Virus record (IMG/VR): IMGVR_UViG_3300022744_000020
Span: 186,001 to 250,000 of that record
Direction: 5' to 3' (one strand)
Length of the DNA stretch: 64,000 nucleotides
In this document: one piece after another, positions 5,318 to 18,720 of the stretch
Numbering within the stretch: position 1 is the stretch's first letter
Layout: every line of letters starts with the position of its first letter
Notes under the pieces: generated by a model
Database searches by the model: none
The model's input: the letters and a program-made list of their open reading frames with translations, nothing else
What the model was told of the DNA's origin: nothing
Translations under genes and position numbers: made by a program

Positions 5318-5334
5318 ACGAAGTCAACAACCAC

Positions 5335-5348: not shown

Positions 5349-5354
5349 TTTGAA

Positions 5355-5924: not shown

Positions 5925-5951
5925 TCATTTCAACCACCACGAGGATCAGCC

Positions 5952-6623
5952 ATGCATCAGCTCAACACCCCTAGTCAGCAATTCCACCACGTCGGAGCGG
6001 TTGAAATTCGCCCCAATAATTTTGCTGTCACGTTGCCGTTCGAGATTCTTGATCGGAAAATAAATATCAGTACCCATAAAAGTCTCACGTGGGGAGAGAT
6101 TCATTCGCTTCTCAGTAAGCACACGCGTGAAGGTCTGCGCATGTTCTTGGTGACGACCAAGGGACAAAGTCATCTCGTCTTGGAGACGGACAAGAACATG
6201 AATCCAACGGATGCCCGGAAATTGGAGCAGGAGGTCTACCTGCTTTTGACCAAGGCCATTGGAAGAGATGAGAATTCCAACGACGTGAAGTCCAGCCGGA
6301 GTAGAAACCTCACCGTGTTCGGTTTCTATCACGGAGATGATGCTGTGAAGTTTCTCAACGCTTACCGGTATTTTCGTGAGCCGGCCGAGCCGTTGAAGAT
6401 CTCTGAAACTGGCATGATGATGTTCTATGCCGGAGAACTCCCTGTGTTGGTCAATGCAAAGAACATCAACTACATCCGTCAAGATCAGCGAAGCAGTGAG
6501 TCTGTCGTGATCTCCTTCATGTCGAGTTCGGTTTTTGTGACCTACCCGTCGGAAGAAATCGCTGAGAAAGTGATCCTGAAAGCACAAGAGTACCTGATGG
6601 GTGTGGTCCCCACCCTTTCGTAA
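5952..6623 (+). CDS. Hypothetical protein, paralog family A
   Basis: C-terminal VTYPSEEIAEKV motif shared with the next two genes. Confidence 0.8.
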   Translation: MHQLNTPSQQFHHVGAVEIRPNNFAVTLPFEILDRKINISTHKSLTWGEIHSLLSKHTREGLRMFLVTTKGQSHLVLETDKNMNPTDARKLEQEVYLLLTKAIGRDENSNDVKSSRSRNLTVFGFYHGDDAVKFLNAYRYFREPAEPLKISETGMMMFYAGELPVLVNAKNINYIRQDQRSSESVVISFMSSSVFVTYPSEEIAEKVILKAQEYLMGVVPTLS

Positions 6624-6648
6624 AACTTCTCATTTCTCGGAGTAAAAA

Positions 6649-7338
6649 ATGGATTATTCTAGCCTTACCTCGTGCCAGAAGCATTACCGTCCTATCAACG
6701 TGAACCCTTCGGACGAGCACAGTCGCGAGAAGGCCGTCTACCTGGGTAGTCACTTCTATTTGACGATTCCAAAGATTGTCGATGTTGTGATGACTTTGGA
6801 TCGACCCGCGGGCTTCTCTTTCAGTTTCACCGAACTGGAAGGAGAATGTTACATGCATTTCGAGTTCTCGAAAGAGGACTCTCCGGTCGAAATCTCGAAC
6901 CATTTGAAAGAGTTCGAGCGGAAAGCAATCGAAGCGGCCGGCGGGGCTCACAAAGTCGGTCGGATTTATCAGAAAAAGATCGGCAACTCGGTGGTGTTTG
7001 GATTCTCCATCGATAGTGCCGCGATTGATTTCTTGAGGACGTATCTGTTCTTTCGTGAGGTGGACAAGGTTCCAAACGGTAAGGAGCCGAAAGCTCGCCC
7101 GGTTGTGAAGTTCAAGAACGGATTCGTCACCCTCTTTGATGGCCTGACCTCCCTTATGTGCCGTTTGTCGGCAATTACCTACGTCTACTCGGGTGCGGGG
7201 GAAAGGACAGAAGACTCGGCGCGAACGATTTACCTGGGTGTGGATGGGGTGCCCCAGCACCTGAAGTTCCCCAGCCCAGAGATCGCGGAGACCGTCGTTT
7301 CCGTGGTTCAGAACAACCTCATGGAAATCGACAATTAA
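6649..7338 (+). CDS. Hypothetical protein, paralog family A
   Basis: C-terminal LKFPSPEIAETV. Confidence 0.8.
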   Translation: MDYSSLTSCQKHYRPINVNPSDEHSREKAVYLGSHFYLTIPKIVDVVMTLDRPAGFSFSFTELEGECYMHFEFSKEDSPVEISNHLKEFERKAIEAAGGAHKVGRIYQKKIGNSVVFGFSIDSAAIDFLRTYLFFREVDKVPNGKEPKARPVVKFKNGFVTLFDGLTSLMCRLSAITYVYSGAGERTEDSARTIYLGVDGVPQHLKFPSPEIAETVVSVVQNNLMEIDN

Positions 7339-7347
7339 GGAGCCAAC

Positions 7348-8058
7348 ATGCCCGCCCAATCCGAAAAAGAGTATTACACCCCCGTCGCACGATGTATTGG
7401 CGGGGTCATCCAACTTAACCCCCTTAACCCACTGGACGTCGGCTCTTTGGATGGTTTCTTAAACCGTAAGGTTTTCGAAGATCGAGAACCTATGCTGGTC
7501 TCCGAGTACCTCCGAATCAGCAAGGATTTCTGGAGAGGCGAAGGTCCGAGAGACACGCTGGACATCATCTACGAATGGAAGGACGAGCTCCATGTGGTTT
7601 TGGAGTATTTAAAAGCGGAGAGTCCGGCTAGGATGCGGATTAATGCCAGAGTCCTGACAAAAGCACTCGCCGAAGTGGGACAACTGGGAGATCACCCGCG
7701 ATTGTCTAATGTGCGCGAACTCTTCGCTCTTGGCGGACACAGCCTTTTCCCAAAGCTGAATGTTCTCAACGCTGTTCACTATCACAAAGGAATAGCTAGG
7801 GGAATGAAGCCAATCTGGAGGGACGAGTTAGAAAACGTCGGCTTCTTCACGGGCGAAGTAAGAATGATGGTTCAGAGGAAGCAGATTCTTTCGTATTGGT
7901 TCGGGGGCAATGGTTGTGCTGAAATTGAACTGAGTCCGTCTGAACTGGCTTTGATCATTGGGTCCAATAGTCAGCCAATTCGGATCAGTTATCCATCTCC
8001 AGACATTGCGGAGTCTGTTGCTGAATCCCTTGAAAAGATGATGGGTTCGTTGGGCTAA
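7348..8058 (+). CDS. Hypothetical protein, paralog family A
   Basis: C-terminal ISYPSPDIAESV; AAGGAG RBS. Confidence 0.8.
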   Translation: MPAQSEKEYYTPVARCIGGVIQLNPLNPLDVGSLDGFLNRKVFEDREPMLVSEYLRISKDFWRGEGPRDTLDIIYEWKDELHVVLEYLKAESPARMRINARVLTKALAEVGQLGDHPRLSNVRELFALGGHSLFPKLNVLNAVHYHKGIARGMKPIWRDELENVGFFTGEVRMMVQRKQILSYWFGGNGCAEIELSPSELALIIGSNSQPIRISYPSPDIAESVAESLEKMMGSLG

Positions 8059-8075
8059 CTGCCGGCAAAAAGATA

Positions 8076-8113
8076 CTGACAGCCACCAGCCATGAAAGGC
8101 TGGTGGCTGTCAG
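8076..8113. terminator. Bidirectional terminator between convergent genes
   Basis: 16-bp perfect stem CTGACAGCCACCAGCC-ATGAAA-GGCTGGTGGCTGTCAG. Confidence 0.8.
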
Positions 8114-8116
8114 GTC

Positions 8117-8191
8117 TTACTTTTCTTTCTTCTGAATCGGACCAAACCAAATCATCCAAAAGAGCCACGGGTTCAACATCAGAACGGCCAT
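8117..8191 (-). CDS. 24-aa Trp-rich membrane peptide MAVLMLNPWLFWMIWFGPIQKKEK
   Basis: Read by hand; ATG 3 nt after the amidase stop; fills the gap to the terminator. Confidence 0.5.
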   Translation of the reverse strand: MAVLMLNPWLFWMIWFGPIQKKEK

Positions 8192-8194
8192 GAC

Positions 8195-8689
8195 TTAAGC
8201 CTCGCTTGCGGAAAAGCCACCCACGACACTCTGAACCTTCAGGTCCCGATTCGGCGTCGGCACACCCTTCGGCCACCGAATACCGATCAGTCTCGCCAGC
8301 GGGAATTTCACGTCACTGACCCGGTTGCCCTGATTCCCCCCACGAACCACCAGATGCCCATCGGGCGTCTTTCCGAGGATGAAGCCCACGTGACCACCAC
8401 CTTCTCGTGCGAAGATGCCTACGGCCCCTTCCTGCGCGATGGTGAGGGGTTGTCCGAATTCCATCCAGTCACGTGCTCGGAAATAGTTTTCAGGCGGCTT
8501 GATTCCCACCTGGTTCAGGCAGTAAGCCACATAAACCCCACACCACGCCCCTGCGTTGATGGTGGGATTGAAACTGTCTGAGAACCACTTCGGTCCCAGT
8601 TTTTTTGCCCAGCCCTTGATTTCGATGGAGTTTTTGTTCTCCTCGAAGCCAAGATACTTCTTTCCTTCTTCAAGCCAAGGTGTCGACAT
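8195..8689 (-). CDS. NlpC/P60-CHAP-like peptidoglycan hydrolase (TIGR02594-like)
   Basis: PWLEEGKKYLG, AWCGVYV (Cys), GGGHVGFI (His), GGNQGNRV; GGAGG RBS before MSTPW. Confidence 0.85.
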   Translation of the reverse strand: MSTPWLEEGKKYLGFEENKNSIEIKGWAKKLGPKWFSDSFNPTINAGAWCGVYVAYCLNQVGIKPPENYFRARDWMEFGQPLTIAQEGAVGIFAREGGGHVGFILGKTPDGHLVVRGGNQGNRVSDVKFPLARLIGIRWPKGVPTPNRDLKVQSVVGGFSASEA

Positions 8690-8816
8690 CGCGTCCTCCA
8701 ATAAGAGATCCGACCTAAATCTTAGATCAGACGATGGTTTTAAATTCACAGATCGACCTCATCAAGTGCCCGATAATTCAGGCGTTCCAACATCGACTTC
8801 CCGGAGAAATACGCTC

Positions 8817-9707
8817 ATGTCTAAAAAGCAACTTCCTCAGCCCGAACAAAATTTCTTTCTGACGAAAGAGTTTGTTTTGGATACGTTCCCGAAGCAGACG
8901 CATCTTCGACTCAATGCCGTCACAGCCATGCTTGACTCGTGGTCGGCATTGATCTGGCCGCACATCCAAACCGCTTCCCCAACCCCAGAGTTGAACTCGC
9001 TGAAAGATCAGCTTCAACGTGCGAAGCTGAAGATCCAGCAGGCTGACAAAATGCGGCCACAAGATCACTTTGAGGGGCGCGGGACCATCGGCGTCGAAGT
9101 CAGCATGCATCTGAGAATGACGACGATAGCGCAGCCGCACTCCATTCAGAATGAACGGCTGAATTATGAGTTTCGTCAGCTTTTCGTCTATCCTATCGAA
9201 GAGTTCAGTGCGGAGGAACTGGACAAAATTGGGCAGGATCTGCTTCTGCTCTGCAAGCGAGTGCACTCGGTCTCAGTTAATCACAATCCGGGAGAACAGG
9301 CAGACGACATTGGTATCGTCGCGGAAGATCGAATCTTCAATTCCAAGACCCCGCTGCTTTATCTTCGCGGTACCTCACGCCAACACGATCTGGAGGGGGT
9401 GCAGACCAACACCGAACCCGCCACCTATGCAATGTATTCCAGTGCAGCCGGGCATTTCAAGATCGTCATCAATCACCCGATCGAAGGACCGATCGACGTC
9501 AATGGCGCTTTCTTTCTCGAAGGAATGCTTCTGGGGATTGTTTTCGGTCTCTGGTTGATGTATAGTGATTTCAAACGCGTCACTGAAGATGAGTCGTTCC
9601 TGCTGAGCGATTACCAGTCATTTGAAAACAAATGGAAAAATGACTTCCTAGAAGGAACTAAGTCCAAGGCAGTGATAGATTGCCTGGATGATGCGCACGA
9701 AGAATAA
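8817..9707 (+). CDS. Hypothetical protein
   Basis: Long ORF; GGAG before MSKKQ. Confidence 0.8.
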   Translation: MSKKQLPQPEQNFFLTKEFVLDTFPKQTHLRLNAVTAMLDSWSALIWPHIQTASPTPELNSLKDQLQRAKLKIQQADKMRPQDHFEGRGTIGVEVSMHLRMTTIAQPHSIQNERLNYEFRQLFVYPIEEFSAEELDKIGQDLLLLCKRVHSVSVNHNPGEQADDIGIVAEDRIFNSKTPLLYLRGTSRQHDLEGVQTNTEPATYAMYSSAAGHFKIVINHPIEGPIDVNGAFFLEGMLLGIVFGLWLMYSDFKRVTEDESFLLSDYQSFENKWKNDFLEGTKSKAVIDCLDDAHEE

Positions 9708-9734
9708 CTCACTCACCTGAAACCTGGAAGAAAA

Positions 9735-10988
9735 ATGGAAAATTGCCTGAACCGAATCGTCGTTGCTTACGATCGCCGTGATTACGACGCCGCCCTTGCA
9801 GCGGCCCTGAAAATCTTCAACCTGCAGTCGGTGGGATATTCTCCCATCGTTCGCCCGATTGAGCCCAAACACCCGAATGAGAGCTTTTCTCAGTTCTACG
9901 GGTGTCAAACAGCGTACTTCCTCGGTTTCATGCCTGGACTGGCTGAGCTGATCGGGTTTCATGATGCTGGGTCCAGCGTCGTTGTCCATTACAACTTGCC
10001 GGATTCGGCTGAAATCCTTCGAGAACTCCCAGGAGCGCTGGGGACTCGCGTGGGGGATTGCCTCCTGCAGAAAACCCCCTTCCCTACGCAAGTGGCCATT
10101 TTGGCTCCGGTCACTCGGATTCTCATCACTGCGACTGAGAAGGAAAGCCTCACAACTCAAGTCTTGAAAGGACATCACGATGTTGCGTGGGATCGAATTC
10201 AGGCGCTTCCCGGCCTTGCTCATTGCCAGGAAGTTCTGACGGAGATCGAGGCGGGTCGGACCAAAATCACTTCCATGTACGATGACACCTTCGACCTCCT
10301 CAACCGTTGCCAAGATCCGGCAATGGCTTTTCTTCAACTTCTGACCCAGGGAGATCGGAAGGTACATGCGTCGAGAGAGGGGGAGCTTTCGGTCGGGATC
10401 CCGAATCTGCTGGAATACCCACTCCCTCGATTTCTGTTCACCCCTCCGAATTCGGGTCGCTGCATGGAAGCTACGATGGTTCGGGCCCCCGCCCATCTGG
10501 TTCGTTGTTACCTGAGAGTTCTTCGGGATATCAACCCGCTGGACTGGATCATCACGTATCAAGATGGTCCGGCGTTCAACTTCCAGTTTATGCCGCCGGA
10601 AAACGCCACCCCCGAGTACATCGAGGAGTTCGTCAAGACCCTTGGGGCACAATACAAGAACGGTTTCGGAACATTCAGTTGGGGAAGTATTTCTCACCTG
10701 AAGAAAATAGGCTACTTGGTGGATTTGCCCTCTGATGGCCAAGCTCCGAGGATGTGCCCGCTCTACGGCATCAATGACGGAACTGGAGCAATACCCAGCG
10801 CCTCGGGCCCTTTCCGGTCTTCGTATGAGATGCAGAGCCTGTTCGAACCCTGGGTCAGCGCGTGTCACAGTGAAGCACTGGCTGCAAAGCACATCCTGGA
10901 GAAAGCCAATCCAGAGAAAAAATATACCATATGTCAGCTTTCTCCGAGTGTTGATCAGACAAGCGCTGCGCGACTCTCGACTGTGTGA
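9735..10988 (+). CDS. Hypothetical protein
   Basis: 417-aa ORF in operon context. Confidence 0.8.
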   Translation: MENCLNRIVVAYDRRDYDAALAAALKIFNLQSVGYSPIVRPIEPKHPNESFSQFYGCQTAYFLGFMPGLAELIGFHDAGSSVVVHYNLPDSAEILRELPGALGTRVGDCLLQKTPFPTQVAILAPVTRILITATEKESLTTQVLKGHHDVAWDRIQALPGLAHCQEVLTEIEAGRTKITSMYDDTFDLLNRCQDPAMAFLQLLTQGDRKVHASREGELSVGIPNLLEYPLPRFLFTPPNSGRCMEATMVRAPAHLVRCYLRVLRDINPLDWIITYQDGPAFNFQFMPPENATPEYIEEFVKTLGAQYKNGFGTFSWGSISHLKKIGYLVDLPSDGQAPRMCPLYGINDGTGAIPSASGPFRSSYEMQSLFEPWVSACHSEALAAKHILEKANPEKKYTICQLSPSVDQTSAARLSTV

Positions 10989-11030
10989 GTCTAGGTTCTG
11001 ACAAATAGTATGCGATAGAAGAAGCATAAA

Positions 11031-11066
11031 AAAATGAAGCCGCTGGTCAAAGGCGGCTTCATTTTT
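11031..11066. terminator. Terminator hairpin
   Basis: AAAATGAAGCCGC...GCGGCTTCATTTT with A and T flanks. Confidence 0.75.
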
Positions 11067-11154
11067 GCAGCTCACGTCGTGGGGGATATTACCCAGAGCA
11101 ATAAGTGATCGCAAAGATCCGGGCTCTTTCTTTTTTGTCTATTCAGGACCTGAT

Positions 11155-12897
11155 ATGTTGAAATTAAAGTATCTGCTCTTAGGACTGGTCTTTGCGACAT
11201 TGTCCGCTTGCGGTGGTGGGGATGTGGAAGAAGCTCCCGTCAGCGCTCCACCAAGTGAATTTGTGGGTCCAGTGAGTCCCACACCGCCAGTCGTGGTGCC
11301 AGTTGATCCCACGCCGGTCAATCCAACTCCGACTCCAACGCCTATCACACCCGCCCCAGTCACCCCTACTCCCACACCAGTGATCACACCACCGGTAGTG
11401 GTTCCGGAACCCGTCCCCGTTGTGACCCCTCCTCCGGTCATTCCAGCGAACACCAAATGTTTGCCTGGGGTTGGATCCGACTATGTTGTCGGTGCTGGCC
11501 AACCTTATGGCTCCGCAGACTTGGTTCCGTGGGAAAGCTTGAAGGCCGGTGACAGCGTTCGCTTCACCTATTCAAGCTCACCATACAAAGCCAAATTCAT
11601 CGTGACTGGATTTGGTACTTCGGCTGCACCCATCACAATTTGCGGCATTCCTGGGCCGAATGGTGAAAGACCCATCATCGAAGGCGCGGGTGCTGTGACT
11701 CGCGCTAATCTGAACACGACCTACGGAAACTCGGAAGAGACCTTTGTTGCTCGAAGCGAACGCTCGATCATCGAAATCACGAAACCCAGCTATGGAACGT
11801 GGGATTCGTTCCCGAGCTATGTGGTGATCAAAGGTCTGAACATCCGTAATTTCAATAAGGGGGATACCTTCACCGATGCACGTGGTGCGTCACGGGTAGC
11901 TGCTCAGTTCAGTGCCTGTGTTTGGGTAGACCGTGGTCAAAATTTGGAATTCTCCGACAACGAGGTTTCGAATTGCTCGATGGCGATGTTCACGAAGTCC
12001 ACGAACGACGGGACCTTTGCGATCACCACGAATCTGAAAATCGCAGGAAACCACATGTGGGGACACGGTGTCGTCGGTTCAGACCGCGAACACACGATCT
12101 ATACCTCTGGATCGAACATTCTCTACGAGTTCAACCATTTCGGCCCTCTGAAATCCGGTGCCTTGGGTAACGCGATCAAAGATCGTTCGGCTGGTTTGAT
12201 GGTGCGATACAACTACATCGAAGAAGGAGCACACTCAATCGACATGGTGGAAGCGGAAGACTGGCCGGACATTGCCACGAAGCTGACTTCTTATCGCAGC
12301 ACTTATGTCTATGGCAACGTGATGAAGAAGACAGGGGACTCGGGGCCTTTCTTCCATTACGGCGGTGATCACTTCGGTGCCCCCGCAGGTGCAAACTGGG
12401 GAGAAACATTGTTCCGTCGAGGCACCCTGTACTTCTGGAACAACACAGTGATTGCCACTGGCGTAGAGGCTCGACTGTTCAAGCTTTCTACCACCCTGGA
12501 GACAGCTCAGATTTGGAACAATGTGTTCTACGGAACCGTCCCGACTGGGGCTTTCTTCCTTCGGCAAAATGAGAGCGACAATGTCTCGGCAAGTTATACT
12601 CGCGCTGGCAATCTGGTGTTTGGTGTTAACTGGGTTCGCGCGGACTATGCTGACAGCGACATCTATCACCCGATCCCAGGAACGATCAGTGGGATGAGTA
12701 ACTTCATCACTGGGACGCTCTCCCCGATTGAGTTGTCTACTTATCGCCCGGTTGCTGGGTCGTCCGTGATCGACAAAGCCCAAGCTAATCTGTCCGGCGT
12801 CAGCGGCATCTCGGTGAACTATCAATTCGTTGGTGGGCAGCCACAGAGTCGGACCACGACGGGTGCTGGTGTGGATCTTGGAGCTATTGAGTATTGA
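11155..12897 (+). CDS. Lipoprotein with Pro/Thr/Val linker and right-handed beta-helix (pectin-lyase-like) domain
   Basis: MLKLKYLLLGLVFATLSA-C lipobox; PVTPTPTP linker; repeated FSDNEV/IAGNHM/YEFNHF/VRYNYI/VYGNVM/FWNNTV/IWNNVF coils. Confidence 0.8.
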   Translation: MLKLKYLLLGLVFATLSACGGGDVEEAPVSAPPSEFVGPVSPTPPVVVPVDPTPVNPTPTPTPITPAPVTPTPTPVITPPVVVPEPVPVVTPPPVIPANTKCLPGVGSDYVVGAGQPYGSADLVPWESLKAGDSVRFTYSSSPYKAKFIVTGFGTSAAPITICGIPGPNGERPIIEGAGAVTRANLNTTYGNSEETFVARSERSIIEITKPSYGTWDSFPSYVVIKGLNIRNFNKGDTFTDARGASRVAAQFSACVWVDRGQNLEFSDNEVSNCSMAMFTKSTNDGTFAITTNLKIAGNHMWGHGVVGSDREHTIYTSGSNILYEFNHFGPLKSGALGNAIKDRSAGLMVRYNYIEEGAHSIDMVEAEDWPDIATKLTSYRSTYVYGNVMKKTGDSGPFFHYGGDHFGAPAGANWGETLFRRGTLYFWNNTVIATGVEARLFKLSTTLETAQIWNNVFYGTVPTGAFFLRQNESDNVSASYTRAGNLVFGVNWVRADYADSDIYHPIPGTISGMSNFITGTLSPIELSTYRPVAGSSVIDKAQANLSGVSGISVNYQFVGGQPQSRTTTGAGVDLGAIEY

Positions 12898-12911
12898 ACT
12901 CAAAATAGTGC

Positions 12912-12945
12912 AAAGGACAGGGCTTTCGGGCCCTGTCCTTTTTTT
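12912..12945 (+). terminator. Rho-independent terminator
   Basis: AAAGGACAGGGCT-TTCG-GGCCCTGTCCTTT plus T run. Confidence 0.9.
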
Positions 12946-12989
12946 ATGCCTTAGCGGTTTAGTATGTAAAAACCAACCGAGTAATTCCC

Positions 12990-14054
12990 ATGACCGAATT
13001 CAAGTATCTCAATCGCAAAACTGCTGAACTTCTTTTTGGAACTGACTTTCTAATACCTGGTCAGACCAACTCCGAACTCCATCGTGGGATTATAGCCACC
13101 AGGCAATCTCTTCAAATGCTGTCGGTTCAATTAGGGCAGCACTTCCCGATGCTCGGCACGATCTCTTTGTCGGACGCAAACATGTCCATCTTCCCAGAGG
13201 TTTCCGAGCAAGAGCAAATCAAGAACTTTCTCAAAGGAAAGAACGGGTACGGTGATGAAATTCGTCGTTTCATTGCTCGAATGGTTTGCTTCAGTGGACC
13301 TGTGTCGGAACGAATTGTGGATGACCGGATCATTTACCATCTGGGAACTCATCCGGAACTGACGGTTCTGAATAAAGAGTTTCTTTTGGCGTACCCCAAT
13401 AACCTGCCCCTATTGAGGATAAAGAATCCCAAGGATCTGAATGTCGCTTTCTTCCGATGGTTTCGTCAGCGTGCTCACAGTTTGAAAGTTCCTGTTTTCA
13501 AATCCGTTCGTTACCCGTTGGTGTCGATGGAGTTTGAACCCAATGGCGTTGGACACGCTATTCAGCACGAGCTAGAAGGTGTATTCACGTATGAAAACGA
13601 ATCGAGTATTCCGGACGATTTACTAGATGAAATAACCACCCACATTAGTAACCACGTTGGTCTGGGTCCGGATCTTGAACTTACGATGGAGGCCGTTCAG
13701 AGCACGCTGATTCAAATCTTGAACGAAGGAGTGAAATCTAAAGAATCACTGTATCTCTACGGTCAGGACCATCGCACTGAATCAAATCGCAGTCTGATTA
13801 TCAGTAAATTGAAAGAAGGTACGGTAATAGAAATACTTCTTAGCTATTACGACTATAACGGCCGAGAGGTTGGGTACAGACACGTCTGCGAAATTGGGGA
13901 GGAGTTGACGGAAGAAAAGAAAACGGAGGCTCTAAGCTGGATCAAAGATTGCTTTGAAAAGATCAAATCCCCCACCGATCAGTGGTTTGTCGCGGATGTC
14001 CTGATGAGGCGATACAAAGAACTGACCAAAGAAATCAAGTCCCAGCAGGAGTGA
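12990..14054 (+). CDS. Hypothetical protein
   Basis: 354-aa ORF. Confidence 0.8.
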   Translation: MTEFKYLNRKTAELLFGTDFLIPGQTNSELHRGIIATRQSLQMLSVQLGQHFPMLGTISLSDANMSIFPEVSEQEQIKNFLKGKNGYGDEIRRFIARMVCFSGPVSERIVDDRIIYHLGTHPELTVLNKEFLLAYPNNLPLLRIKNPKDLNVAFFRWFRQRAHSLKVPVFKSVRYPLVSMEFEPNGVGHAIQHELEGVFTYENESSIPDDLLDEITTHISNHVGLGPDLELTMEAVQSTLIQILNEGVKSKESLYLYGQDHRTESNRSLIISKLKEGTVIEILLSYYDYNGREVGYRHVCEIGEELTEEKKTEALSWIKDCFEKIKSPTDQWFVADVLMRRYKELTKEIKSQQE

Positions 14055-14067
14055 TTCCATCTTTTTT

Positions 14068-14094
14068 CAGTCACATATAACCTATGTGAATCGA
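14068..14094 (+). promoter_or_regulatory. Phage promoter-like motif
   Basis: CAGTCACATATAACCTATGTGAATCGA, near-identical copy at 38763; contains the TCACAT/ATGTGA inverted repeat. Confidence 0.65.
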
Positions 14095-14116
14095 AGCAAT
14101 CCTTGCTTCAGCCCAC

Positions 14117-14130
14117 TCCCGAGAAAGGGA
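14117..14130 (+). promoter_or_regulatory. RBS hairpin TCCC-GAGAAA-GGGA
   Basis: Covarying copy; ATG at 14138. Confidence 0.65.
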
Positions 14131-14137
14131 ATTAATC

Positions 14138-14443
14138 ATGGCAATGATGCGAATCACTTTTGGAAGACTGATGTTTTCCGTTCACGAAAAAGAGGCTGAA
14201 AAGTTAAATAAGGAGTTTATAGCGGCTGGTGGTGATCGCGCCGCCCTGGCAATACTCGTGAACAACGGCTGGAAGTTTCGTGTCATTCCAGCCCGACCAA
14301 ACCCTGGGGAGTTGGACCTCCCGCATGACTGGAAAGATATAGTCGAGGTAATTTCTCAGCCTCGCTTATCTTTGTGGGAAAGGTGCGTCCGACCCGAACC
14401 GATCCCCTTCCCCTCGTTTTCTGAATTTTCTCAGTTCTCCTGA
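14138..14443 (+). CDS. Hypothetical protein
   Basis: First gene after the promoter motif. Confidence 0.75.
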   Translation: MAMMRITFGRLMFSVHEKEAEKLNKEFIAAGGDRAALAILVNNGWKFRVIPARPNPGELDLPHDWKDIVEVISQPRLSLWERCVRPEPIPFPSFSEFSQFS

Positions 14444-14451
14444 TAAAAGGA
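14438..14451 (+). promoter_or_regulatory. RBS hairpin TCCT-GATAAA-AGGA
   Basis: Variant copy overlapping the upstream stop; ATG at 14460. Confidence 0.55.
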
Positions 14452-14459
14452 CCTTTCTC

Positions 14460-15029
14460 ATGAACGCCCTGAATATTCTTTCTCTCTCCTCGGTGACGCC
14501 TGCTGAACTCGATCAATGCATGCTCGAGAACCTTGGCGTCGTTGACAAAATCACCCTCGCGGACGGTACCTGCCTGAAATACTGGAACGAGTTCATTCCC
14601 AACCTCCTGCCCGGTGGTTGGTCCGTCCGTTGGGTTAATGTGAAGCCGACTTCGGCAGACCTGGTGCTTGTCCCAAACACCGGTCGTGCTCGTCACGTTC
14701 GGAAACAAGGGTTTGTCCAGCACTGGATGAAGAAGGGTCTTGACGCCGTCGAGGCTGAAGCACTCTACGAATGCCGCACGCAATACAAAATCGAGGTGGC
14801 CGACAAAGCCATTGAGATTTGGATCGCTCCTGAAAATGAGAAGCTCTATAATGCCTACCACGCACTATGCGACCATCCGGGATCGTACGGCTCTGGCTCC
14901 GGTCGCTCCGGCTGGCGCATGAAGAATCTCGATTCGCTCAAGGGAGCGGATCTACACGAGTGGTCCGCACAGCGAGAACTGGCATTGGTGATTTGCATTC
15001 GGGCACTTCAAGAAGCCAATGCCAACTGA
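14460..15029 (+). CDS. Hypothetical protein
   Basis: ORF in operon. Confidence 0.75.
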   Translation: MNALNILSLSSVTPAELDQCMLENLGVVDKITLADGTCLKYWNEFIPNLLPGGWSVRWVNVKPTSADLVLVPNTGRARHVRKQGFVQHWMKKGLDAVEAEALYECRTQYKIEVADKAIEIWIAPENEKLYNAYHALCDHPGSYGSGSGRSGWRMKNLDSLKGADLHEWSAQRELALVICIRALQEANAN

Positions 15030-15423
15030 GGGAAATCAAATGACGTTCGCAATCTTCAACCATCAAATTCTTCAGGCTCTTCCAGGAGTGCTGGAGGAAC
15101 TGGGGCTGATCCCTGGGCAAGTGGTATCGGCCGAGGAGGTGAAAATGATCACGGCCTCCAATCTGATGAAAATGTTGGAGGTCATGTCGGCTCCCAAGAT
15201 CCGATCGGAATACTTGTCCCGAAGACTCCCGACTGTGCCTCCCCAGGAAGCCGGAGGAAATTATGGGTACTCAAGCCGCGAGGAATTTCTGACCGCGGTG
15301 AAAGCGGCCACCTTTAGGAGAGAACAGACCGGACAAATCCCCGCACCCGCGTCCGATCTGATTGGATACCGTTTTCCGCTTGAGTTCTTCGCAGGTAAAG
15401 GGATCTGTCAGGATCTCAACTGA
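15019..15423 (+). CDS. Hypothetical protein
   Basis: ORF in operon; start may be 15040. Confidence 0.7.
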   Translation: MPTEGNQMTFAIFNHQILQALPGVLEELGLIPGQVVSAEEVKMITASNLMKMLEVMSAPKIRSEYLSRRLPTVPPQEAGGNYGYSSREEFLTAVKAATFRREQTGQIPAPASDLIGYRFPLEFFAGKGICQDLN

Positions 15424-15424
15424 A

Positions 15425-15467
15425 ACACAGCCCCGGATTTCTCCGGGGCTGTGTAACTTTATTTTTT
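15425..15467 (+). terminator. Terminator
   Basis: ACACAGCCCCGGA-TTTC-TCCGGGGCTGTGT followed by T-rich sequence. Confidence 0.8.
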
Positions 15468-15499
15468 GTCCTCTTACTCTGAACTCAAAGGAGCCCAAA

Positions 15500-15808
15500 A
15501 TGACCAATCAAGTTACCGGAACTTTTTATTTAAGAGAAGCCGGCTCGGATAACTTTCAATCTCAAATCGAGATGGGTAACCAGGAGAAAATAATTATGGT
15601 TATTGGAGTTTTGAAAGTCCCGGTTTCCTTTATTGCCGATGAACAATCCGTCCCAATTTCGGGAGTCGTAAAGGCAAATGGTGAGGTAGTTCTCAAAATG
15701 CACATGACGATGCGAGAGGACTATAGAGACAAAATAGGACTCAGAGGTTACTATTATTCCGGCCTCAAAATGGGTAGTTTGTTACTTGAACCGATATGGA
15801 AGGTTTAA
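15500..15808 (+). CDS. Hypothetical protein
   Basis: AAGGAG RBS before MTNQVTG. Confidence 0.7.
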   Translation: MTNQVTGTFYLREAGSDNFQSQIEMGNQEKIIMVIGVLKVPVSFIADEQSVPISGVVKANGEVVLKMHMTMREDYRDKIGLRGYYYSGLKMGSLLLEPIWKV

Positions 15809-16606
15809 ATGTTTACCTACGCTCGCTTTTCAAGCAAGGAAAAACCCGGCTATGAAGTGTCTAGTGCCGGGGATAATCGATTCTCAGCACTGAACGCTGT
15901 TCTAGAAGACGGCAGAAGCATTGAGATGCATTATCAACTAGACGTTAAAGGATATTCCCCTGGAGGGACGGATTGGAAACTAGGTAAAGGTAAACCGGGA
16001 CTTAATCCTCAGACGGACCTATGGTCCGAATACCTGAAACTCTGGTGGCGGTGGTGCAAACTTAATCCAAAAATGCTGGAGTTTCTTAGAGAGGTAGTAG
16101 AGAAAGAAAACAGCGGTCTTCTAACTGATAAGTTTGCCAGTACAGACATCAGCCAAGCTCGGGCACTTGCCGAGATATTGAACACGCCAATATCTAAATT
16201 GATAGTCGTACCCACAAGCTTTAATGAAAAGATACCAAGTAAGATAGAGCGGTATCTATCTCAAAATCATCCGAGCATTTTGGAACAGTATTTGACTCAC
16301 ATGGGGTTAAGCCGAGCTCAAAGCAACGACTGGTCCACCGATCAAACCCGAATGACGTGGACGTGGATCTGGTCAAGTCGTTCCGTGGAAGAGCTGTTAT
16401 TATTTTGGCCGTGCTTGCAAGTAGACTTCTTAGAGAAAGTTTGGAAGTTCAGAATCAACGAACTACTTCTTGAGAAACTGAAGTGGTATCCGGACATTCC
16501 TATCGTAATTCTTTCGCCATCGCCAGGCAAAACAATAGGACCCATTAGACAAATTTACCCGTACCTTCAAGAAAACAATAGAACATCGCAGTACCAATTT
16601 GTGTAA
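15809..16606 (+). CDS. NADAR-like domain protein with C-terminal extension
   Basis: RFSALNAVLEDGRSIEMHYQLDVK resembles NADAR S..F...SVEHYYQA.K; later NPKMLEFL and QARALAEIL. Confidence 0.45.
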   Translation: MFTYARFSSKEKPGYEVSSAGDNRFSALNAVLEDGRSIEMHYQLDVKGYSPGGTDWKLGKGKPGLNPQTDLWSEYLKLWWRWCKLNPKMLEFLREVVEKENSGLLTDKFASTDISQARALAEILNTPISKLIVVPTSFNEKIPSKIERYLSQNHPSILEQYLTHMGLSRAQSNDWSTDQTRMTWTWIWSSRSVEELLLFWPCLQVDFLEKVWKFRINELLLEKLKWYPDIPIVILSPSPGKTIGPIRQIYPYLQENNRTSQYQFV

Positions 16607-16614
16607 AAAGAAGA

Positions 16615-16654
16615 ACATATATCATTCAACTGAACCAACCCAGACGAAAAAGGA
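16615..16654 (+). promoter_or_regulatory. Promoter-like motif plus ACCCAGACGAAAAAGGA leader
   Basis: ACATATATCATT at 16615; leader 17-mer also at 642 and 35820. Confidence 0.6.
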
Positions 16655-16660
16655 ATTCCC

Positions 16661-17059
16661 ATGTCATACCCTCTCAGCCTTGCCCAATACACGCGCAAAG
16701 CCAGCAGCCGATTAATCGAGTACATGCTTGCGCATCTGAGCCCGCGAACCTTTGGCCCGACAAATGCCAAGCTGTTCGATAACGACGCGATCGTCGTTAT
16801 CGAATCGTCAATCGTTTCCAACAACCTCGGCCGTGTGGTGAAGATTCACAGCCCGGTACTTTGTTTAGTAGCCAACGACAAAGACAACAAAGCGGCCTAC
16901 TTCGCCCCAGGCGAGATCTATGTTGTTTTGGGAGCTGTAGCCCAAACCGATGGCCGTGAAGACTCCCAGCATTTTGGAACAGTTAGTTTGGCACTCGGCC
17001 AAAACCTAAGGCTCGCCACCCCCAATGAAATCAACACCTACAAATCCCAACAGGAGTAA
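16661..17059 (+). CDS. Hypothetical protein
   Basis: ORF after the promoter motif. Confidence 0.75.
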   Translation: MSYPLSLAQYTRKASSRLIEYMLAHLSPRTFGPTNAKLFDNDAIVVIESSIVSNNLGRVVKIHSPVLCLVANDKDNKAAYFAPGEIYVVLGAVAQTDGREDSQHFGTVSLALGQNLRLATPNEINTYKSQQE

Positions 17060-17064
17060 ACCCA

Positions 17065-17760
17065 ATGACAAATGCTAAGTATTATAACCTACAAGACTGC
17101 GCCATCGAGATCCCACACCGTGAGTTTCTGAAGTGCTCAACGCTCGACGTTCGACTGAAGTTCGGTCCTGATGTCGATGGACTCCCCAAAAACGGGGAAG
17201 AGATAACAGTTGGATCCGAGGAAAACCGAGAAACGTTCACGATCACGCACCCGGTGCTCGCTATCCGTTCGATCGAAACCCAGGAAATCATCTACTTCCC
17301 TCCCTTCGCGCTTTATCTGGCAAAATCCGTTACGGGTGAAGACGTCTTGCTCAAAGCGCCAGATATTCAGCGACTAACAGACGAAGAAAAACAGAGCCGT
17401 CTGATCGAAGCCGAACGACAAGAACGGATGGACCAGTATTTGAAAACCACGGATACTGCGGGTACCTCGAGCACTCTGGAAAGCCTCATTGATTCGACGA
17501 TACAAGATTGTCGACAACACGGCTCTAAAATGCTGGAAGAGGCTTCAATGGCCTTGATGCGCTTACGATTGGATCACTTGCCTCTGACCAAATGGCATTA
17601 CGATCTAGTCATAGAACGTGGGGTTGTGATTCTGGACAACCGTTTCCCGGATGATTTCGGAGTCCCTTTCTTCGAATATCAAGAAGCTCTCGGTCATTGT
17701 CCTGGATGGAAATACGATCTAGATCTGCTGGAGCGTCGTCGTCACTACTTTTACGGATAA
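17065..17760 (+). CDS. Hypothetical protein
   Basis: ORF in operon. Confidence 0.75.
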   Translation: MTNAKYYNLQDCAIEIPHREFLKCSTLDVRLKFGPDVDGLPKNGEEITVGSEENRETFTITHPVLAIRSIETQEIIYFPPFALYLAKSVTGEDVLLKAPDIQRLTDEEKQSRLIEAERQERMDQYLKTTDTAGTSSTLESLIDSTIQDCRQHGSKMLEEASMALMRLRLDHLPLTKWHYDLVIERGVVILDNRFPDDFGVPFFEYQEALGHCPGWKYDLDLLERRRHYFYG

Positions 17761-17767
17761 ACCACGC

Positions 17768-18394: not shown

Positions 18395-18668
18395 AGTCGG
18401 CGATCAAGCCAGGGTCGTTTGGGGGAAGTTCGGTGAACAATCACCCAACCGGGGCAAGATCGTCAAGGTCGAAGAAATGCGGGAAGATCACCCTGTCTTC
18501 GGTCGGATGTGGCGCTGTGGCGGAGAAGACCTGAAGTTCCACAACGAATTCAAGGTGTTGATTTCTGCGCCCTTTGCCATTTTCCCGGCAATCTGGCTGG
18601 AAAAGATCTACCCTCCGGAGCAGTCGGACACCACCACGAAGGTGGTCGAGAAAGAACTGACTGAATAA
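18378..18668 (+). CDS. Small SH3-like hypothetical protein
   Basis: LKVGDQARVV...GKIVKV...WLEKI pattern. Confidence 0.6.
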   Translation: MREPLKVGDQARVVWGKFGEQSPNRGKIVKVEEMREDHPVFGRMWRCGGEDLKFHNEFKVLISAPFAIFPAIWLEKIYPPEQSDTTTKVVEKELTE

Positions 18669-18674
18669 GTCATG

Positions 18675-18716: not shown

Positions 18717-18720
18717 GACT

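What the first reader, a model, noticed from the sequence alone, without database searches (positions are those of the whole stretch)
11155..12897. Phage-encoded lipoprotein displaying a beta-helix polysaccharide enzyme on a Pro/Thr stalk
Seen in sequence: a lipobox LSA-C followed by GGG, an ~70-aa P/T/V linker, and a beta-helix domain with His/Asp/Lys/Arg-rich HTIY, NAIKDRS and IDMVEAED segments, transcribed as a single gene between terminators. Established: phage beta-helix depolymerases are normally virion tailspikes, not lipid-anchored. Inference: it remodels the infected cell's capsule, EPS or LPS for superinfection exclusion or progeny release, and was probably captured from a bacterium.
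Basis: partly seen in the sequence, partly recalled or inferred. Interest (0 to 1): 0.62.

Follow-up and report, generated by a model that had tools for sequence, protein, structure and literature searches.

The report
Jumbo-phage lipoprotein with polysaccharide-cleaving beta-helix
A 270-kb phiKZ-like phage from fresh and waste water carries a well-conserved gene, acquired long ago from Sphaerotilus-type sheathed bacteria, for a lipid-anchored enzyme-like protein on a long proline-rich stalk. It most likely cuts the host's own slime or sheath sugar polymer from the infected cell, a job phages normally give to tail spikes.

Summary
Window 11155-12897(+) encodes a 580-aa protein with three parts:
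- a canonical lipoprotein signal (lipobox LSA|C, then GGG);
- an 82-aa Pro/Val/Thr linker;
- a 479-aa right-handed beta-helix (AF2 pLDDT 94).

The best structural neighbours are polysaccharide lyases: PL31 PsAly (Z 27.7), Vibrio RbmB (Z 26.3) and Pel9A (Z 26.2). Strong hairpins with T-runs flank the gene.

The window lies in a 270-kb phiKZ-like jumbo phage. The protein belongs to a large uncharacterised bacterial family (about 2,000 clusters), with only generic weak Beta_helix and NosD matches in Pfam.

- In Sphaerotilaceae, family members are often lipoproteins with the same CGGG-plus-linker layout. They occur in tandem arrays and lie in or beside Wzy-type exopolysaccharide loci.
- The phage copy is nested inside a Sphaerotilus clade.
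- It sits near ThyA and RNR in at least four other phage contigs, keeps all 69 family-invariant residues, and has dN/dS of 0.04.

So this is an old, selected, host-derived gene, and the lipoprotein-on-a-stalk design was inherited rather than invented by the phage.

Activity, substrate, lipidation and benefit to the phage (progeny release, anti-trapping, superinfection exclusion) remain inference.

Verdict: new variant of a known kind; interest 0.55.

The parts
11030..11066 (+). Upstream hairpin with an A-run before and a T-run after (terminator-like, could work in both directions). It separates the gene from the 417-aa ORF that ends at 10988.
   Evidence: RNA fold -22.3 kcal/mol, z -5.6, 0 of 200 shuffles as good. 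The loop of 7 was missed by the simple scan. A hairpin stands at the same position in L005, L086 and L090.
11145..11148 (+). Shine-Dalgarno-like AGGA, 6 nt before the ATG.
   Evidence: Sequence read.
11155..12897 (+). Coding sequence of the 580-aa lipoprotein precursor (P0001), stop TGA included.
   Evidence: Translation; 442 homologues; dN/dS 0.044 against the 98% relative.
11155..11211 (+). Lipoprotein signal peptide (aa 1-18) and the lipid-acceptor Cys19. The lipobox LSAC is at nt 11200-11211, and residues +2 to +4 are GGG (no Asp at +2).
   Evidence: Sequence rules for lipoprotein signals: charged start, hydrophobic stretch, [LVI][ASTVI][GAS]C. Cys followed by GGG is kept in all full-length phage orthologues. 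No SignalP run was possible.
11212..11457 (+). Low-complexity Pro/Val/Thr linker ('stalk'), aa 20-101, 82 aa.
   Evidence: Composition 28 P, 18 V, 12 T. Sequence and length vary between orthologues (65-123 aa), and a 14-aa indel separates it from the 98% relative. There is no DNA tandem repeat.
11458..12894 (+). Right-handed parallel beta-helix domain, aa 102-580, with four conserved Cys (102, 163, 255, 274).
   Evidence: AF2 pLDDT 93.9. Z 27.7 to PL31 PsAly, 26.3 to RbmB, 26.2 to Pel9A. ESM Atlas relatives at TM 0.87. Cys conservation.
12091..12102 (+). HTIY motif. H313 and Y316 are invariant across the wide family and are candidate catalytic residues.
   Evidence: Invariant in A1 (50 sequences) and A2 (59 sequences down to 29% identity).
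12169..12189 (+). NAIKDRS motif. K342, D343, R344 and S345 are invariant or nearly so. K342 is the candidate general base.
   Evidence: The analogy with RbmB K227 and PsAly K221 rests on order and spacing only (PMC12993940, PMC6796002).
12238..12261 (+). IDMVEAED motif on the next coil. D363 and E366 are candidate metal ligands or activators of the Lys.
12355..12372 (+). HYGGDH motif. H401, Y402 and D405 are nearly invariant.
   Evidence: It was also used as the search pattern that recovered family members.
12912..12948 (+). Downstream intrinsic-terminator-like hairpin (13 pairs, 7 G-C) followed by T7.
   Evidence: GC-rich hairpins lie directly after the stop codon in L005, L086, L088, L089 and L090.

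Best explanation
The gene encodes a precursor that the host Sec/Lgt/LspA pathway exports and lipidates at Cys19. With Gly at +2 it would, by default, go on to the outer membrane. An 82-residue Pro/Val/Thr tether holds a monomer-type beta-helix domain away from the membrane.

That domain belongs to a large, uncharacterised bacterial family. In Sphaerotilaceae the family is encoded in or beside Wzy-type exopolysaccharide loci. It most likely cleaves the cell's own uronic-acid-bearing extracellular polysaccharide (slime, capsule or sheath matrix). The chemistry would be lyase-type, with K342 as base, H313/Y316 as partner, and D343/D363/E366 holding a cation or tuning the Lys.

An ancestor of this group of phiKZ-like jumbo phages took the whole gene from a Sphaerotilus-like host and has kept it. 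Made in the infected cell, the enzyme would strip or loosen the polymer around that cell. Progeny could then get out and would not be trapped on debris. As a side effect, later phages would lose a polysaccharide receptor.

Shown: gene, architecture, fold, family, bacterial origin, conservation and purifying selection in phages.
Inferred: export and lipidation, catalysis, lyase chemistry, substrate, host genus, timing, and benefit to the phage.
For: Architecture.

Fold and neighbours:
- pLDDT 93.9.
- The top five entries by Z are uronate lyases or epimerases: PsAly 27.7, RbmB 26.3/25.9, Pel9A 26.2, alginate epimerase/lyase 25.6.

Export:
- The signal and the Cys are kept in all phage orthologues.
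- Four conserved Cys in the mature domain fit an oxidising compartment.

Family:
- 442 word-search hits and about 2,005 clusters by profile.
- 76 genome loci, mostly Sphaerotilus, Leptothrix, Methylibium, Aquabacterium, Piscinibacter and Rhizobacter.
- Tandem arrays of 2-4 paralogues, and 5 copies in S. natans.

Bacterial context:
- In Piscinibacter and Leptothrix the gene lies among Wzy_C, GT4 x3, GT2, acyltransferase, hexapeptide transferase, epimerase, GFO_IDH_MocA, UDP-GlcNAc 2-epimerase and GNVR genes.
- Recurrent neighbours across genera are GT4, Hexapep, Epimerase, GFO_IDH_MocA and polysaccharide deacetylase.
- The Sphaerotilus sheath contains glucuronic acid, galactosamine and glucose (PMC11087309).

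Origin: the phage clade is nested (100*, 98*, 99*) within Sphaerotilus/Sphaerotilaceae. The best DNA match in 201 genomes of that family is the S. natans gene.

Selection and age:
- Syntenic copies in L005, L086, L090 and L089.
- 69 of 69 invariant residues kept.
- dN/dS 0.044, from 53.5 synonymous and 8.5 non-synonymous changes.
- GC3 0.57 against 0.95 in S. natans.

Habitat: freshwater and wastewater metagenomes in 20 studies.

Independent acquisitions of the same domain: jumbo viral contig L008 carries it with an ordinary signal peptide, an FN3-like region and a PAPT linker. Viral contig L009 carries it without a signal and with a PKD domain, beside tail genes.
Against: - No activity, substrate or lipidation has been measured for any family member.
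- No sequence-level link to any CAZy family. Pfam gives only weak, generic Beta_helix and NosD hits. PDB profile searches give nothing, or only a marginal GH136 hit over the N-terminal cap (E 0.002).
- Beta-helix Z-scores of 20-28 are shared by lyases, hydrolases, epimerases, adhesins and NosD, so the fold does not fix the chemistry.
- The residue equivalence with RbmB and PsAly rests on order and spacing, not on a superposition.
- The host is unknown. No CRISPR-spacer evidence was found in the part searched, and phage GC is 51% against about 68% for Sphaerotilus. phiKZ shows a similar gap from its host (own knowledge).
- Some bacterial members lie outside EPS loci.
- Expression evidence is one 151-nt contig in one metatranscriptome.
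Confidence: 0.55

Rival explanations
1. The protein is a periplasmic modifier or blocker of polysaccharide export rather than a depolymerase of the finished surface layer. Tethered to the inner face of the outer membrane, it would epimerise, trim or cap the nascent polymer as AlgG, AlgL or PelA do. That would shut down or alter EPS production during infection.
For: - Mannuronan C5-epimerases and an epimerase/lyase are among the top fold matches: 8ja4 Z 25.6, AlgE4 Z 24.2, AlgG Z 19.8.
- The A2 profile gives a weak 8ja4 hit, E 0.17.
- Family genes sit inside biosynthetic EPS loci, like the periplasmic processing enzymes of the alginate, Pel and Psl systems (own knowledge).
- A lipoprotein with Gly at +2 normally faces the periplasm from the outer membrane.
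Against: - The AlgE/AlgG signature motifs were not found by any sequence method.
- An 82-aa stalk and the domain partners seen in other phyla (dockerin, T9SS tail, Ig-like) point to extracellular display.
- Tandem paralogue arrays are more typical of degradative enzymes.
Confidence: 0.15
2. The protein is a glycoside hydrolase, not a lyase, with the same biological role. Conserved acidic residues (D343, D363, E366, D405) would act as acid/base and nucleophile.
For: - Foldseek's best PDB hits are GH136 lacto-N-biosidases, E 1e-8 to 4e-7.
- The only sub-0.01 sequence-profile hit in the PDB is GH136 6kqs.
- Many tailspike hydrolases and GH28 enzymes score Z 21-25.
Against: - The GH136 profile match covers only the N-terminal cap and first coils, not a catalytic region.
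- TM-scores to GH136 are 0.43-0.48 with rmsd above 10 A.
- Ranked by Z, lyases lead.
- The most conserved residues across the wide family are His, Tyr, Arg and Lys.
Confidence: 0.2
3. The protein is a non-catalytic envelope protein. The beta-helix would bind a polysaccharide or an outer-membrane receptor and mask it, giving superinfection exclusion of the T5 Llp or Cor kind without any cleavage.
For: - Phage lipoproteins that block receptors are known (own knowledge).
- Beta-helix adhesins such as PfbA score Z 22.5.
- No activity has been shown for any family member.
Against: - A ladder of invariant charged and aromatic residues on successive coils is kept from Acidobacteriota to phages (H313, Y316, K342, D343, R344, D363, H401, Y402, D405). 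That is typical of an active site.
- The location of bacterial members in EPS loci argues for an enzyme.
Confidence: 0.08
4. The protein is a virion tailspike or tail-associated depolymerase whose N-terminus merely resembles a signal peptide.
For: - The fold is shared with many tailspikes (Z 21-25).
- The homologue on viral contig L009 has no signal and sits next to tail genes, and L008's copy lies near a tail-fibre gene.
Against: - A canonical lipobox with Cys followed by GGG is conserved in all orthologues.
- There is no N-terminal adaptor or particle-binding domain, only an 82-aa disordered linker.
- The gene lies among nucleotide-metabolism genes, not structural ones.
- No PHROG tail family matched.
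Confidence: 0.03

Closest known systems
Vibrio cholerae RbmB (VPS lyase encoded in the biofilm-matrix gene cluster; PDB 9ozl/9ozd)
   Same: - Single-chain right-handed beta-helix: Z 26.3 / 25.9, rmsd 3.0, 303-310 residues aligned, 16-17% identity.
- Encoded next to the genes that make the polymer it cuts.
- Lys base (K227) tuned by an acidic residue on the next coil (E253), with Arg residues further along the groove (PMC12993940). The family's invariant K342 ... D363/E366 ... R381 ... R421 follow the same order and similar spacing.
   Different: - No detectable sequence or profile similarity.
- The equivalence of residues is not verified by superposition.
- RbmB is bacterial and is not described as a lipoprotein on a stalk.
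- The substrate here is unknown.
PL31 alginate lyase PsAly, Paenibacillus sp. FPU-7 (PDB 6kfn)
   Same: - Best structural match: Z 27.7, rmsd 2.2, 269 residues aligned, 18% identity.
- Catalytic Tyr/Lys pair on adjacent coils, with acidic cation ligands (PMC6796002). This resembles Y316, K342 and D343/D363/E366.
   Different: - PsAly is 298 aa and covers only part of the 479-aa domain.
- No sequence-level relationship was found.
- It is a secreted Gram-positive enzyme acting on foreign alginate.
Phage tailspike / capsule depolymerases (e.g. Kp32gp38, CBA120 TSP2, K5A lyase)
   Same: Phage-encoded beta-helix proteins that cut host surface polysaccharide; Z 21.7-24.8.
   Different: - Those are cytoplasmic, trimeric virion parts with an N-terminal adaptor, and they act at entry.
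- This protein has a lipoprotein signal, a disordered stalk and no adaptor.
- It lies outside structural modules and would act from the infected cell.
Phage-encoded envelope lipoproteins (T5 Llp, phi80/N15 Cor, lambda Bor)
   Same: A phage gene whose product uses the host lipoprotein pathway and acts at the envelope of the infected cell. Llp also protects progeny from being inactivated on debris (own knowledge).
   Different: Those are small (about 60-100 aa) non-enzymatic proteins that block or mimic. Here a 479-aa enzyme-like domain is attached.
EPS-operon processing enzymes (AlgL, AlgG, PelA, PslG, BcsZ)
   Same: The bacterial relatives are encoded within polysaccharide synthesis loci. AlgG shares the fold (Z 19.8).
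   Different: These belong to different families, and most are soluble periplasmic proteins. No sequence relationship was found.

Membership tests
Bacterial lipoprotein precursors (Lgt/LspA substrates) | Positively charged start, a hydrophobic stretch of 7-22 residues, and a lipobox [LVI][ASTVI][GAS]C with the Cys within about the first 35 residues. | tested here: met
   K3 and K5, then YLLLGLVFATL, then L16-S17-A18-C19. The same layout is kept in phage orthologues and in many bacterial members. This is a rule-based reading; SignalP was not available.
Bacterial lipoprotein precursors (Lgt/LspA substrates) | Actual diacylglyceryl modification and signal peptidase II cleavage. | not testable with these tools
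   Needs palmitate labelling or globomycin sensitivity.
Right-handed parallel beta-helix (pectate-lyase-like) superfamily | A three-sheet right-handed beta-helix of stacked coils. | tested here: met
   AF2 pLDDT 93.9. Z 20-28 to more than 40 beta-helix structures. 46 of 50 members give weak PF13229 hits.
CAZy PL31 | Sequence membership, plus the catalytic Tyr184/Lys221 pair and the cation ligands Glu181/Glu216/Asp219. | tested here: inconclusive
   It is the best fold match (Z 27.7), but no sequence or profile hit was found. Residue equivalence could not be checked because no model coordinates or residue-level alignment were available.
RbmB-type polysaccharide lyase | Lys227 base, Glu253 activator, and Arg residues that bind the substrate. 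| tested here: inconclusive
   Z 26.3. The order and spacing of invariant K342, D363/E366, R381 and R421 are compatible, by linear interpolation only. There is no sequence-level match.
CAZy GH136 (lacto-N-biosidase) | Profile similarity across the catalytic coils, with the Asp acid/base and nucleophile. | tested here: not met
   The profile hit (E 0.0021) covers only positions 38-208, the N-terminal cap and first coils. Foldseek TM is 0.43-0.48.
Phage tailspike depolymerase | N-terminal particle-binding or adaptor domain, no secretion signal, and a gene in the tail module. | tested here: not met
   The N-terminus is a lipoprotein signal followed by a disordered linker. Neighbours are ThyA, RNR and unknown genes. 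No PHROG match. Trimerisation could not be tested because three copies exceed the size limit of the complex predictor.
Moron-like autonomous transcription unit | A gene bracketed by its own terminator(s), with its own promoter. | tested here: inconclusive
   The hairpins on both sides are strong and conserved in position. No sigma-70-like promoter was found, but a phiKZ-like phage uses its own RNA polymerases, so that scan does not apply. The only transcript evidence is one 151-nt contig.
Anti-phage defence / superinfection-exclusion families in PADLOC | A match to a known defence protein model. | tested here: not met
   No PADLOC hit for the protein or for either neighbour.

The most novel reading that the evidence does not exclude
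A lineage of phiKZ-like jumbo phages that infect sheathed, filament-forming Sphaerotilus-type bacteria uses a host-derived, lipid-anchored sheath or slime lyase as an extra 'exit' function. Endolysin and spanins open the cell. This enzyme, already displayed on the envelope, would open the polysaccharide tube or slime that would otherwise imprison the progeny. It would be the polysaccharide-layer counterpart of mycobacteriophage LysB. The same family in the host would then be the long-sought enzyme set that remodels the sheath and lets swarmer cells out.
Probability: 0.25. Interest if true: 0.75.

Novelty: new variant of a known kind. Interest (0 to 1): 0.55.

Why it matters
Phage depolymerases are studied almost only as virion tail spikes or as soluble enzymes released at lysis. 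This gene points to a third mode: an enzyme-like beta-helix that the infected cell itself exports and anchors by lipid.

Three features raise its value.
- It was taken whole from the host's own exopolysaccharide toolkit and kept under strong selection across a diverged group of jumbo phages.
- Two further phage contigs acquired the same domain separately, in secreted and signal-less forms.
- It highlights a large family (about 2,000 clusters at 50% identity) of uncharacterised beta-helix proteins in EPS loci of Sphaerotilus, Leptothrix and relatives. Sheath and slime remodelling genes are unknown in these bacteria, which cause sludge bulking.

A recombinant enzyme could be tested directly on sheath and slime. 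If active, it would give both a new carbohydrate-active enzyme family and a tool against filamentous bulking.

Tried and rejected
Family and structure assignment
- Pfam, PHROGs and NCBIfam on the protein gave nothing significant: PF13229 at E 0.16, and chance RnfD hits.
- PADLOC gave nothing.
- INPHARED phages gave no match, either by DNA over the 6-kb stretch or by protein.
- PDB sequence searches gave no usable link. I tried the protein, profile A1, the divergent members P0123 and an S. natans distant paralogue, and the broader profile A2.
- The BFVD viral structure search gave only generic beta-helix hits, TM at most 0.53.
- The big profile search showed the family's size. Its listed top 150 hits were all close members, so it did not bridge to a characterised family.
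- Residue-level superposition on RbmB or PsAly could not be done, because model coordinates are not exposed. Only order and spacing could be compared.

Phage identity
- Hallmark Pfam searches in the phage record (tail sheath PF04984, terminase PF03237, Beta_helix PF13229) found nothing.
- Phage identity instead rests on PHROG hits to split RNA polymerase beta subunits, a DNA polymerase and phiKZ-type unknown families.

Host
- Window 1-20000 was searched in 201 genomes of the S. natans family. Only gene-level similarities came back (ThyA, RNR and this gene).
- Three short near-exact hits were inspected and are not in repeat arrays. The remaining 250 kb of the phage was not searched.

Expression
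- Contigs of four runs were laid on 4,501 bases, within the 6,000-letter limit.
- One metatranscriptome holds a single 151-nt identical piece inside the gene.
- Two 'RNA-Seq' wastewater runs cover gene and neighbours alike and may be DNA.
- This does not show expression.

Other checks
- The linker has no tandem DNA repeat.
- A small CCCC...GGGG hairpin occurs in the 5' leaders of four orthologues. It is not enriched in this phage genome: 23 found against 19 expected.
- The first all-against-all neighbour clustering timed out, and a background job was killed. A reduced set worked.
- The long antisense ORFs over the gene (9648-11114 and 12235-12903, minus strand) have no support and are taken as chance frames.
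- Only genetic code 11 was used.
Full report
**1. What is in the sequence**

Window 11155-12897(+) is an open frame of 580 codons. The frame is open back to a TTG at 11065, but that start would lie inside the upstream hairpin. The ATG at 11155 has AGGA six bases upstream and gives the same N-terminus as the 98% and 81% relatives.

The product has three parts.
- **Signal peptide.** It starts MLKLK, continues with an 11-residue hydrophobic stretch, and then has the lipobox L16-S17-A18-C19 followed by GGG. This fits the rule for lipoprotein signal peptides, with no Asp at +2.
- **Linker.** Residues 20-101 form an 82-aa low-complexity stretch with 28 Pro, 18 Val and 12 Thr. It is not encoded by a DNA tandem repeat.
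- **Folded domain.** It starts at Cys102.

The gene is bracketed by two strong hairpins.
- 11030-11066: -22.3 kcal/mol, z -5.6, with an A-run before and a T-run after.
- 12912-12941: followed by seven T.

The only change is that the linker is about 80 aa rather than about 70.

**2. It is a phage gene**

The window is bases 186001-250000 of a 270,383-bp IMG/VR virus record that CheckV rates 98% complete.
- In the window: thymidylate synthase (743-1747), both ribonucleotide reductase subunits (1789-5237) and an SNF2-type helicase (26126-28894).
- Elsewhere in the record: two adjacent genes matching phage multisubunit RNA polymerase beta subunits (PHROG 3295 and 3015), a phage DNA polymerase (PHROG 2927), and several large proteins of phiKZ-type PHROG families.

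I therefore read it as a phiKZ-like jumbo phage. Pfam models for tail sheath and terminase found nothing, which is common for such divergent phages. Nothing similar is in the INPHARED phage collection.

**3. Fold**

An AlphaFold2 model of residues 95-580, built on an alignment of 50 homologues, has mean pLDDT 93.9 and pTM 0.94. It is a right-handed beta-helix.

A full scan of 48,161 PDB representatives and a re-ranking of Foldseek's own list agree on the top matches:

| Structure | Z | rmsd (A) | Residues aligned | Identity |
|---|---|---|---|---|
| PL31 alginate lyase PsAly | 27.7 | 2.2 | 269 | 18% |
| V. cholerae VPS lyase RbmB | 26.3 and 25.9 | 3.0 | 303-310 | 16-17% |
| Pectate lyase Pel9A | 26.2 | 2.8 | 329 | 13% |
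| Alginate epimerase/lyase | 25.6 | 3.2 | 304 | 12% |

Below these come phage tailspikes, GH28 enzymes, AlgE/AlgG epimerases and PL6 lyases at Z 19-25. Foldseek by E-value prefers GH136 lacto-N-biosidases, at 1e-8 but with TM 0.43-0.48.

The fold is certain. The chemistry is not fixed by it, because Z-scores of 20 or more are shared by all beta-helix enzymes and even by adhesins.

**4. Family**

Pfam, PHROGs and NCBIfam give nothing significant for the protein. Of the 50 aligned members, 46 give weak generic Beta_helix hits.
- The word search found 442 relatives.
- The exhaustive profile search found 2,005 clusters at E at most 1e-3, and 995 at E at most 1e-30. I ran that search because the family scans had left the function open.
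- Structure-based Atlas neighbours at TM 0.87 occur in Acidobacteriota, Planctomycetota, Bacteroidota and Pseudomonadota. There they are joined to He_PIG, dockerin, T9SS-tail or Ig-like modules, which are typical trappings of secreted carbohydrate-active enzymes.

Across a wide alignment reaching down to 29% identity:
- invariant residues include H313, Y316, R344, R351 and N353;
- nearly invariant residues include K342, D343, S345, D363, H401, Y402, D405 and R421.

This is a ladder of charged and aromatic residues on successive coils, as in an active-site groove.

In RbmB the base is K227. It is tuned by E253 on the next coil, with R282, R307 and R349 further along (PMC12993940). In PsAly the catalytic pair is Y184/K221, with acidic cation ligands (PMC6796002). 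The order and spacing of the family's Y316, K342, D363/E366, R381 and R421 fit that pattern. I could compare only by interpolating the aligned ranges, not residue by residue, so this is a lead and not a test.

Profile searches of the PDB found no lyase. The only hit was marginal, to GH136 at E 0.002, and was confined to the N-terminal cap.

**5. What the bacterial relatives tell us**

In one genome per species, 76 loci were recovered.
- Most are in Sphaerotilaceae: Sphaerotilus, Leptothrix, Methylibium, Aquabacterium, Piscinibacter, Rhizobacter and Ideonella.
- Some are in Pseudoxanthomonas and other Lysobacterales, Myxococcota, Acidobacteriota and Paenarthrobacter.

Many members start with a lipobox, CGGG and a Pro/Thr/Ser/Ala-rich linker of 26-308 residues (median 46). 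The lipoprotein-on-a-stalk design therefore belongs to the family, not to the phage.

Tandem arrays of two to four paralogues are common. S. natans has three in a row and five in all: two with ordinary signal peptides and one lipoprotein, the last being the closest to the phage protein at 56%.

In a Piscinibacter and a Leptothrix genome the gene lies within a Wzy-type polysaccharide locus. That locus holds Wzy_C, three GT4, a GT2, an acyltransferase, a hexapeptide transferase, an NAD-epimerase, a GFO_IDH_MocA oxidoreductase, UDP-GlcNAc 2-epimerase and GNVR.

Clustering of neighbours over all loci shows that GT4, hexapeptide transferase, epimerase, GFO_IDH_MocA and polysaccharide deacetylase recur across genera. 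One member lies in an unrelated context.

The oxidoreductase, acetyltransferase and epimerase set is the kind used to make acetamido-uronic acids (own knowledge). The Sphaerotilus sheath itself contains glucuronic acid, galactosamine and glucose, and a foreign lyase cuts it at GalN-GlcA links (PMC11087309). Sheath-formation and remodelling genes in this group are still poorly known (PMC13386937).

The best reading of the bacterial family is a self-polysaccharide processing or degrading enzyme. It would be comparable in role to RbmB, AlgL or PslG.

**6. Origin and history in phages**

*Tree.* I built a maximum-likelihood tree of 110 members, rooted on the distant paralogues. It places P0001 with its 98%, 81% and 77% relatives (100*). 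Next come P0011, P0052, P0012 and P0015 (98*). The whole group sits in a 21-member clade (100*) with two Sphaerotilus clades, which itself lies within Sphaerotilaceae (99*, 98*). This was a quick search with LG+G4, so single stars deserve caution. The nesting rests on several of them.

*The unnamed relatives are phages too.* All four contigs below consist otherwise of small genes without Pfam hits.
- L005 has RNR large and small subunits, then several genes, then the lipoprotein.
- L086 has ThyA, RNR, the lipoprotein and DHFR.
- L090 has the same order, with inteins in RNR and in dCTP deaminase. Its copy, P0013, groups with the other Sphaerotilus clade, which hints at a replacement by a host allele.
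- L088 carries P0015.

*The immediate neighbours are not conserved*, yet the gene and its flanking hairpins are.

*Signs of age and selection.*
- All nine phage-clade proteins keep 69 of 69 family-invariant residues and the four Cys of the mature domain.
- Against the 98% relative, the domain shows 53.5 synonymous and 8.5 non-synonymous differences, giving dN/dS of 0.044.
- GC3 is 0.57, against 0.95 in S. natans, and the genome GC is 0.51.

So the capture was from a Sphaerotilus-like bacterium, it is old, and the gene is under strong purifying selection in the phage.

*Other viral contigs acquired the domain separately*.
- L008 is 200 kb. It has an ordinary signal peptide, an FN3-like region and a (PAPT)n linker, and it groups with Leptothrix and Telluria.
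- L009 has no signal and carries a C-terminal PKD domain. It lies beside the major tail, Neck1 and tape-measure genes, and groups with a Rhodanobacteraceae copy.

**7. Host and habitat**

Near-identical DNA occurs in freshwater and wastewater metagenomes from 20 studies. These are the habitats of Sphaerotilus.

The best DNA-level match among 201 genomes of the S. natans family is the S. natans gene itself, at 68% over 625 bp. Short near-exact hits were not in CRISPR arrays. The host is therefore inferred from this one gene's phylogeny and from habitat, not shown.

One metatranscriptome holds a single identical 151-nt piece inside the gene and nothing in the flanks. Two 'RNA-Seq' wastewater libraries cover everything and may be DNA. 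That is at most a hint of expression.

**8. Mechanism I commit to**

The host exports and lipidates the precursor, and the stalk holds the beta-helix up to roughly 25 nm from the membrane (82 residues, extended). The domain cleaves the host's own uronic-acid-bearing extracellular polysaccharide, most likely by beta-elimination.

For the phage, the pay-off would be an open path for progeny through slime or sheath, less loss of progeny on debris, and removal of a polysaccharide receptor from cells already infected.

My confidence by step:

| Step | Confidence |
|---|---|
| Exported lipoprotein | about 0.85 |
| Catalytic polysaccharide-cleaving enzyme | about 0.7 |
| Lyase rather than hydrolase, if it is an enzyme | about 0.55 |
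| Host EPS or sheath as substrate | about 0.6 |
| The stated benefit to the phage | about 0.5 |

The rival explanations are set out separately in the report.

**9. Comparison and novelty**

It works like RbmB-type self-matrix lyases and like phage depolymerases, but it is a member of neither by any sequence test. It is delivered like T5 Llp-type phage lipoproteins, but it carries an enzyme-sized domain.

I found no paper describing a phage depolymerase with a lipoprotein signal and none on jumbo phages of Sphaerotilus. The library searched is incomplete.

I rate it a new variant of a known kind: a phage polysaccharide depolymerase in a cell-anchored, non-virion form.

Noticed in passing
G000 outside the window: L097:1389-3554 and L097:3570-5636 (G000:C1:115389-119636); L096:2974-5190: There are two adjacent genes for split phage multisubunit RNA polymerase beta subunits (PHROG 3295 and 3015) and a phage DNA polymerase (PHROG 2927). 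Large proteins of PHROG families 3181, 3184, 3222 and 3248 are also present. The record looks like a phiKZ-like jumbo phage. I did not look for a nucleus-shell protein.
   Followed up: partly
window 743-5237: Thymidylate synthase and the RNR large and small subunits lie in a row. The same ThyA/RNR block lies a few genes upstream of the lipoprotein gene in related phage contigs L086 and L090 (RNR only in L005). A 79-nt stretch of thyA (1444-1522) matches about 90 of 201 Sphaerotilaceae-family genomes at 72-81% identity, which simply reflects a conserved enzyme core.
   Followed up: yes
L090:2513-5242 and L090:19529-20554: In a related phage contig, the RNR large subunit (909 aa) and the dCTP deaminase carry intein-splicing domains according to precomputed Pfam hits.
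   Followed up: no
L008:9365-11464 (IMGVR_UViG_3300048672_000970, 200 kb): Another jumbo viral contig carries the same beta-helix domain. It has an ordinary signal peptide, an FN3-like region and a perfect (PAPT)n linker. A tail-fibre gene and a tail-tube gene lie a few kb away. In the tree it is a separate acquisition, grouping with Leptothrix and Telluria.
   Followed up: partly
L009:613-2562 (IMGVR_UViG_3300049822_000143, 9 kb): This version of the domain has no signal peptide and has a C-terminal PKD domain. It lies directly upstream of the major tail, Neck1 and tape-measure genes, so it may be a virion-associated form. It has lost 13 of the 69 family-invariant residues.
   Followed up: partly
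L002:5625-11638 (Sphaerotilus natans) and L105:7356-13198 (Leptothrix): Three family paralogues stand in tandem: two with ordinary signal peptides and one lipoprotein. They lie between a divergently transcribed GT4 glycosyltransferase and, in S. natans, an AlgZ/AlgR-like sensor-regulator pair followed by argH (in Leptothrix, argH directly). S. natans has five family members in all. These are candidates for sheath or slime remodelling.
   Followed up: partly
L005:8590-8620, L086:9880-9900, L088:1175-1195, L090:9945-9965 (approximate): A small CCCC-N(6-8)-GGGG hairpin sits 30-110 nt upstream of the start codon in four orthologous phage contigs, but not in this window. In G000 as a whole the motif is not enriched (23 found, 19 expected).
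   Followed up: partly
window 9648-11114(-) and 12235-12903(-): Long antisense open frames (488 and 222 aa) overlap the upstream gene and the 3' part of the lipoprotein gene. They have no family or homology support and are most likely chance frames.
   Followed up: no
window 11993-12143: A freshwater metatranscriptome run holds one 151-nt contig identical to this stretch of the gene, and nothing else within 9700-14200. This is a weak hint of transcription, and DNA carry-over is not excluded.
   Followed up: partly
window 18721-21831(-), 35799-37352(+), 45670-49068(+): These large ORFs (1036, 517 and 1132 aa) have no Pfam match and no informative PHROG match. The 330-aa ORF at 41291-42283 matches PHROG 6856, of unknown function.
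   Followed up: no
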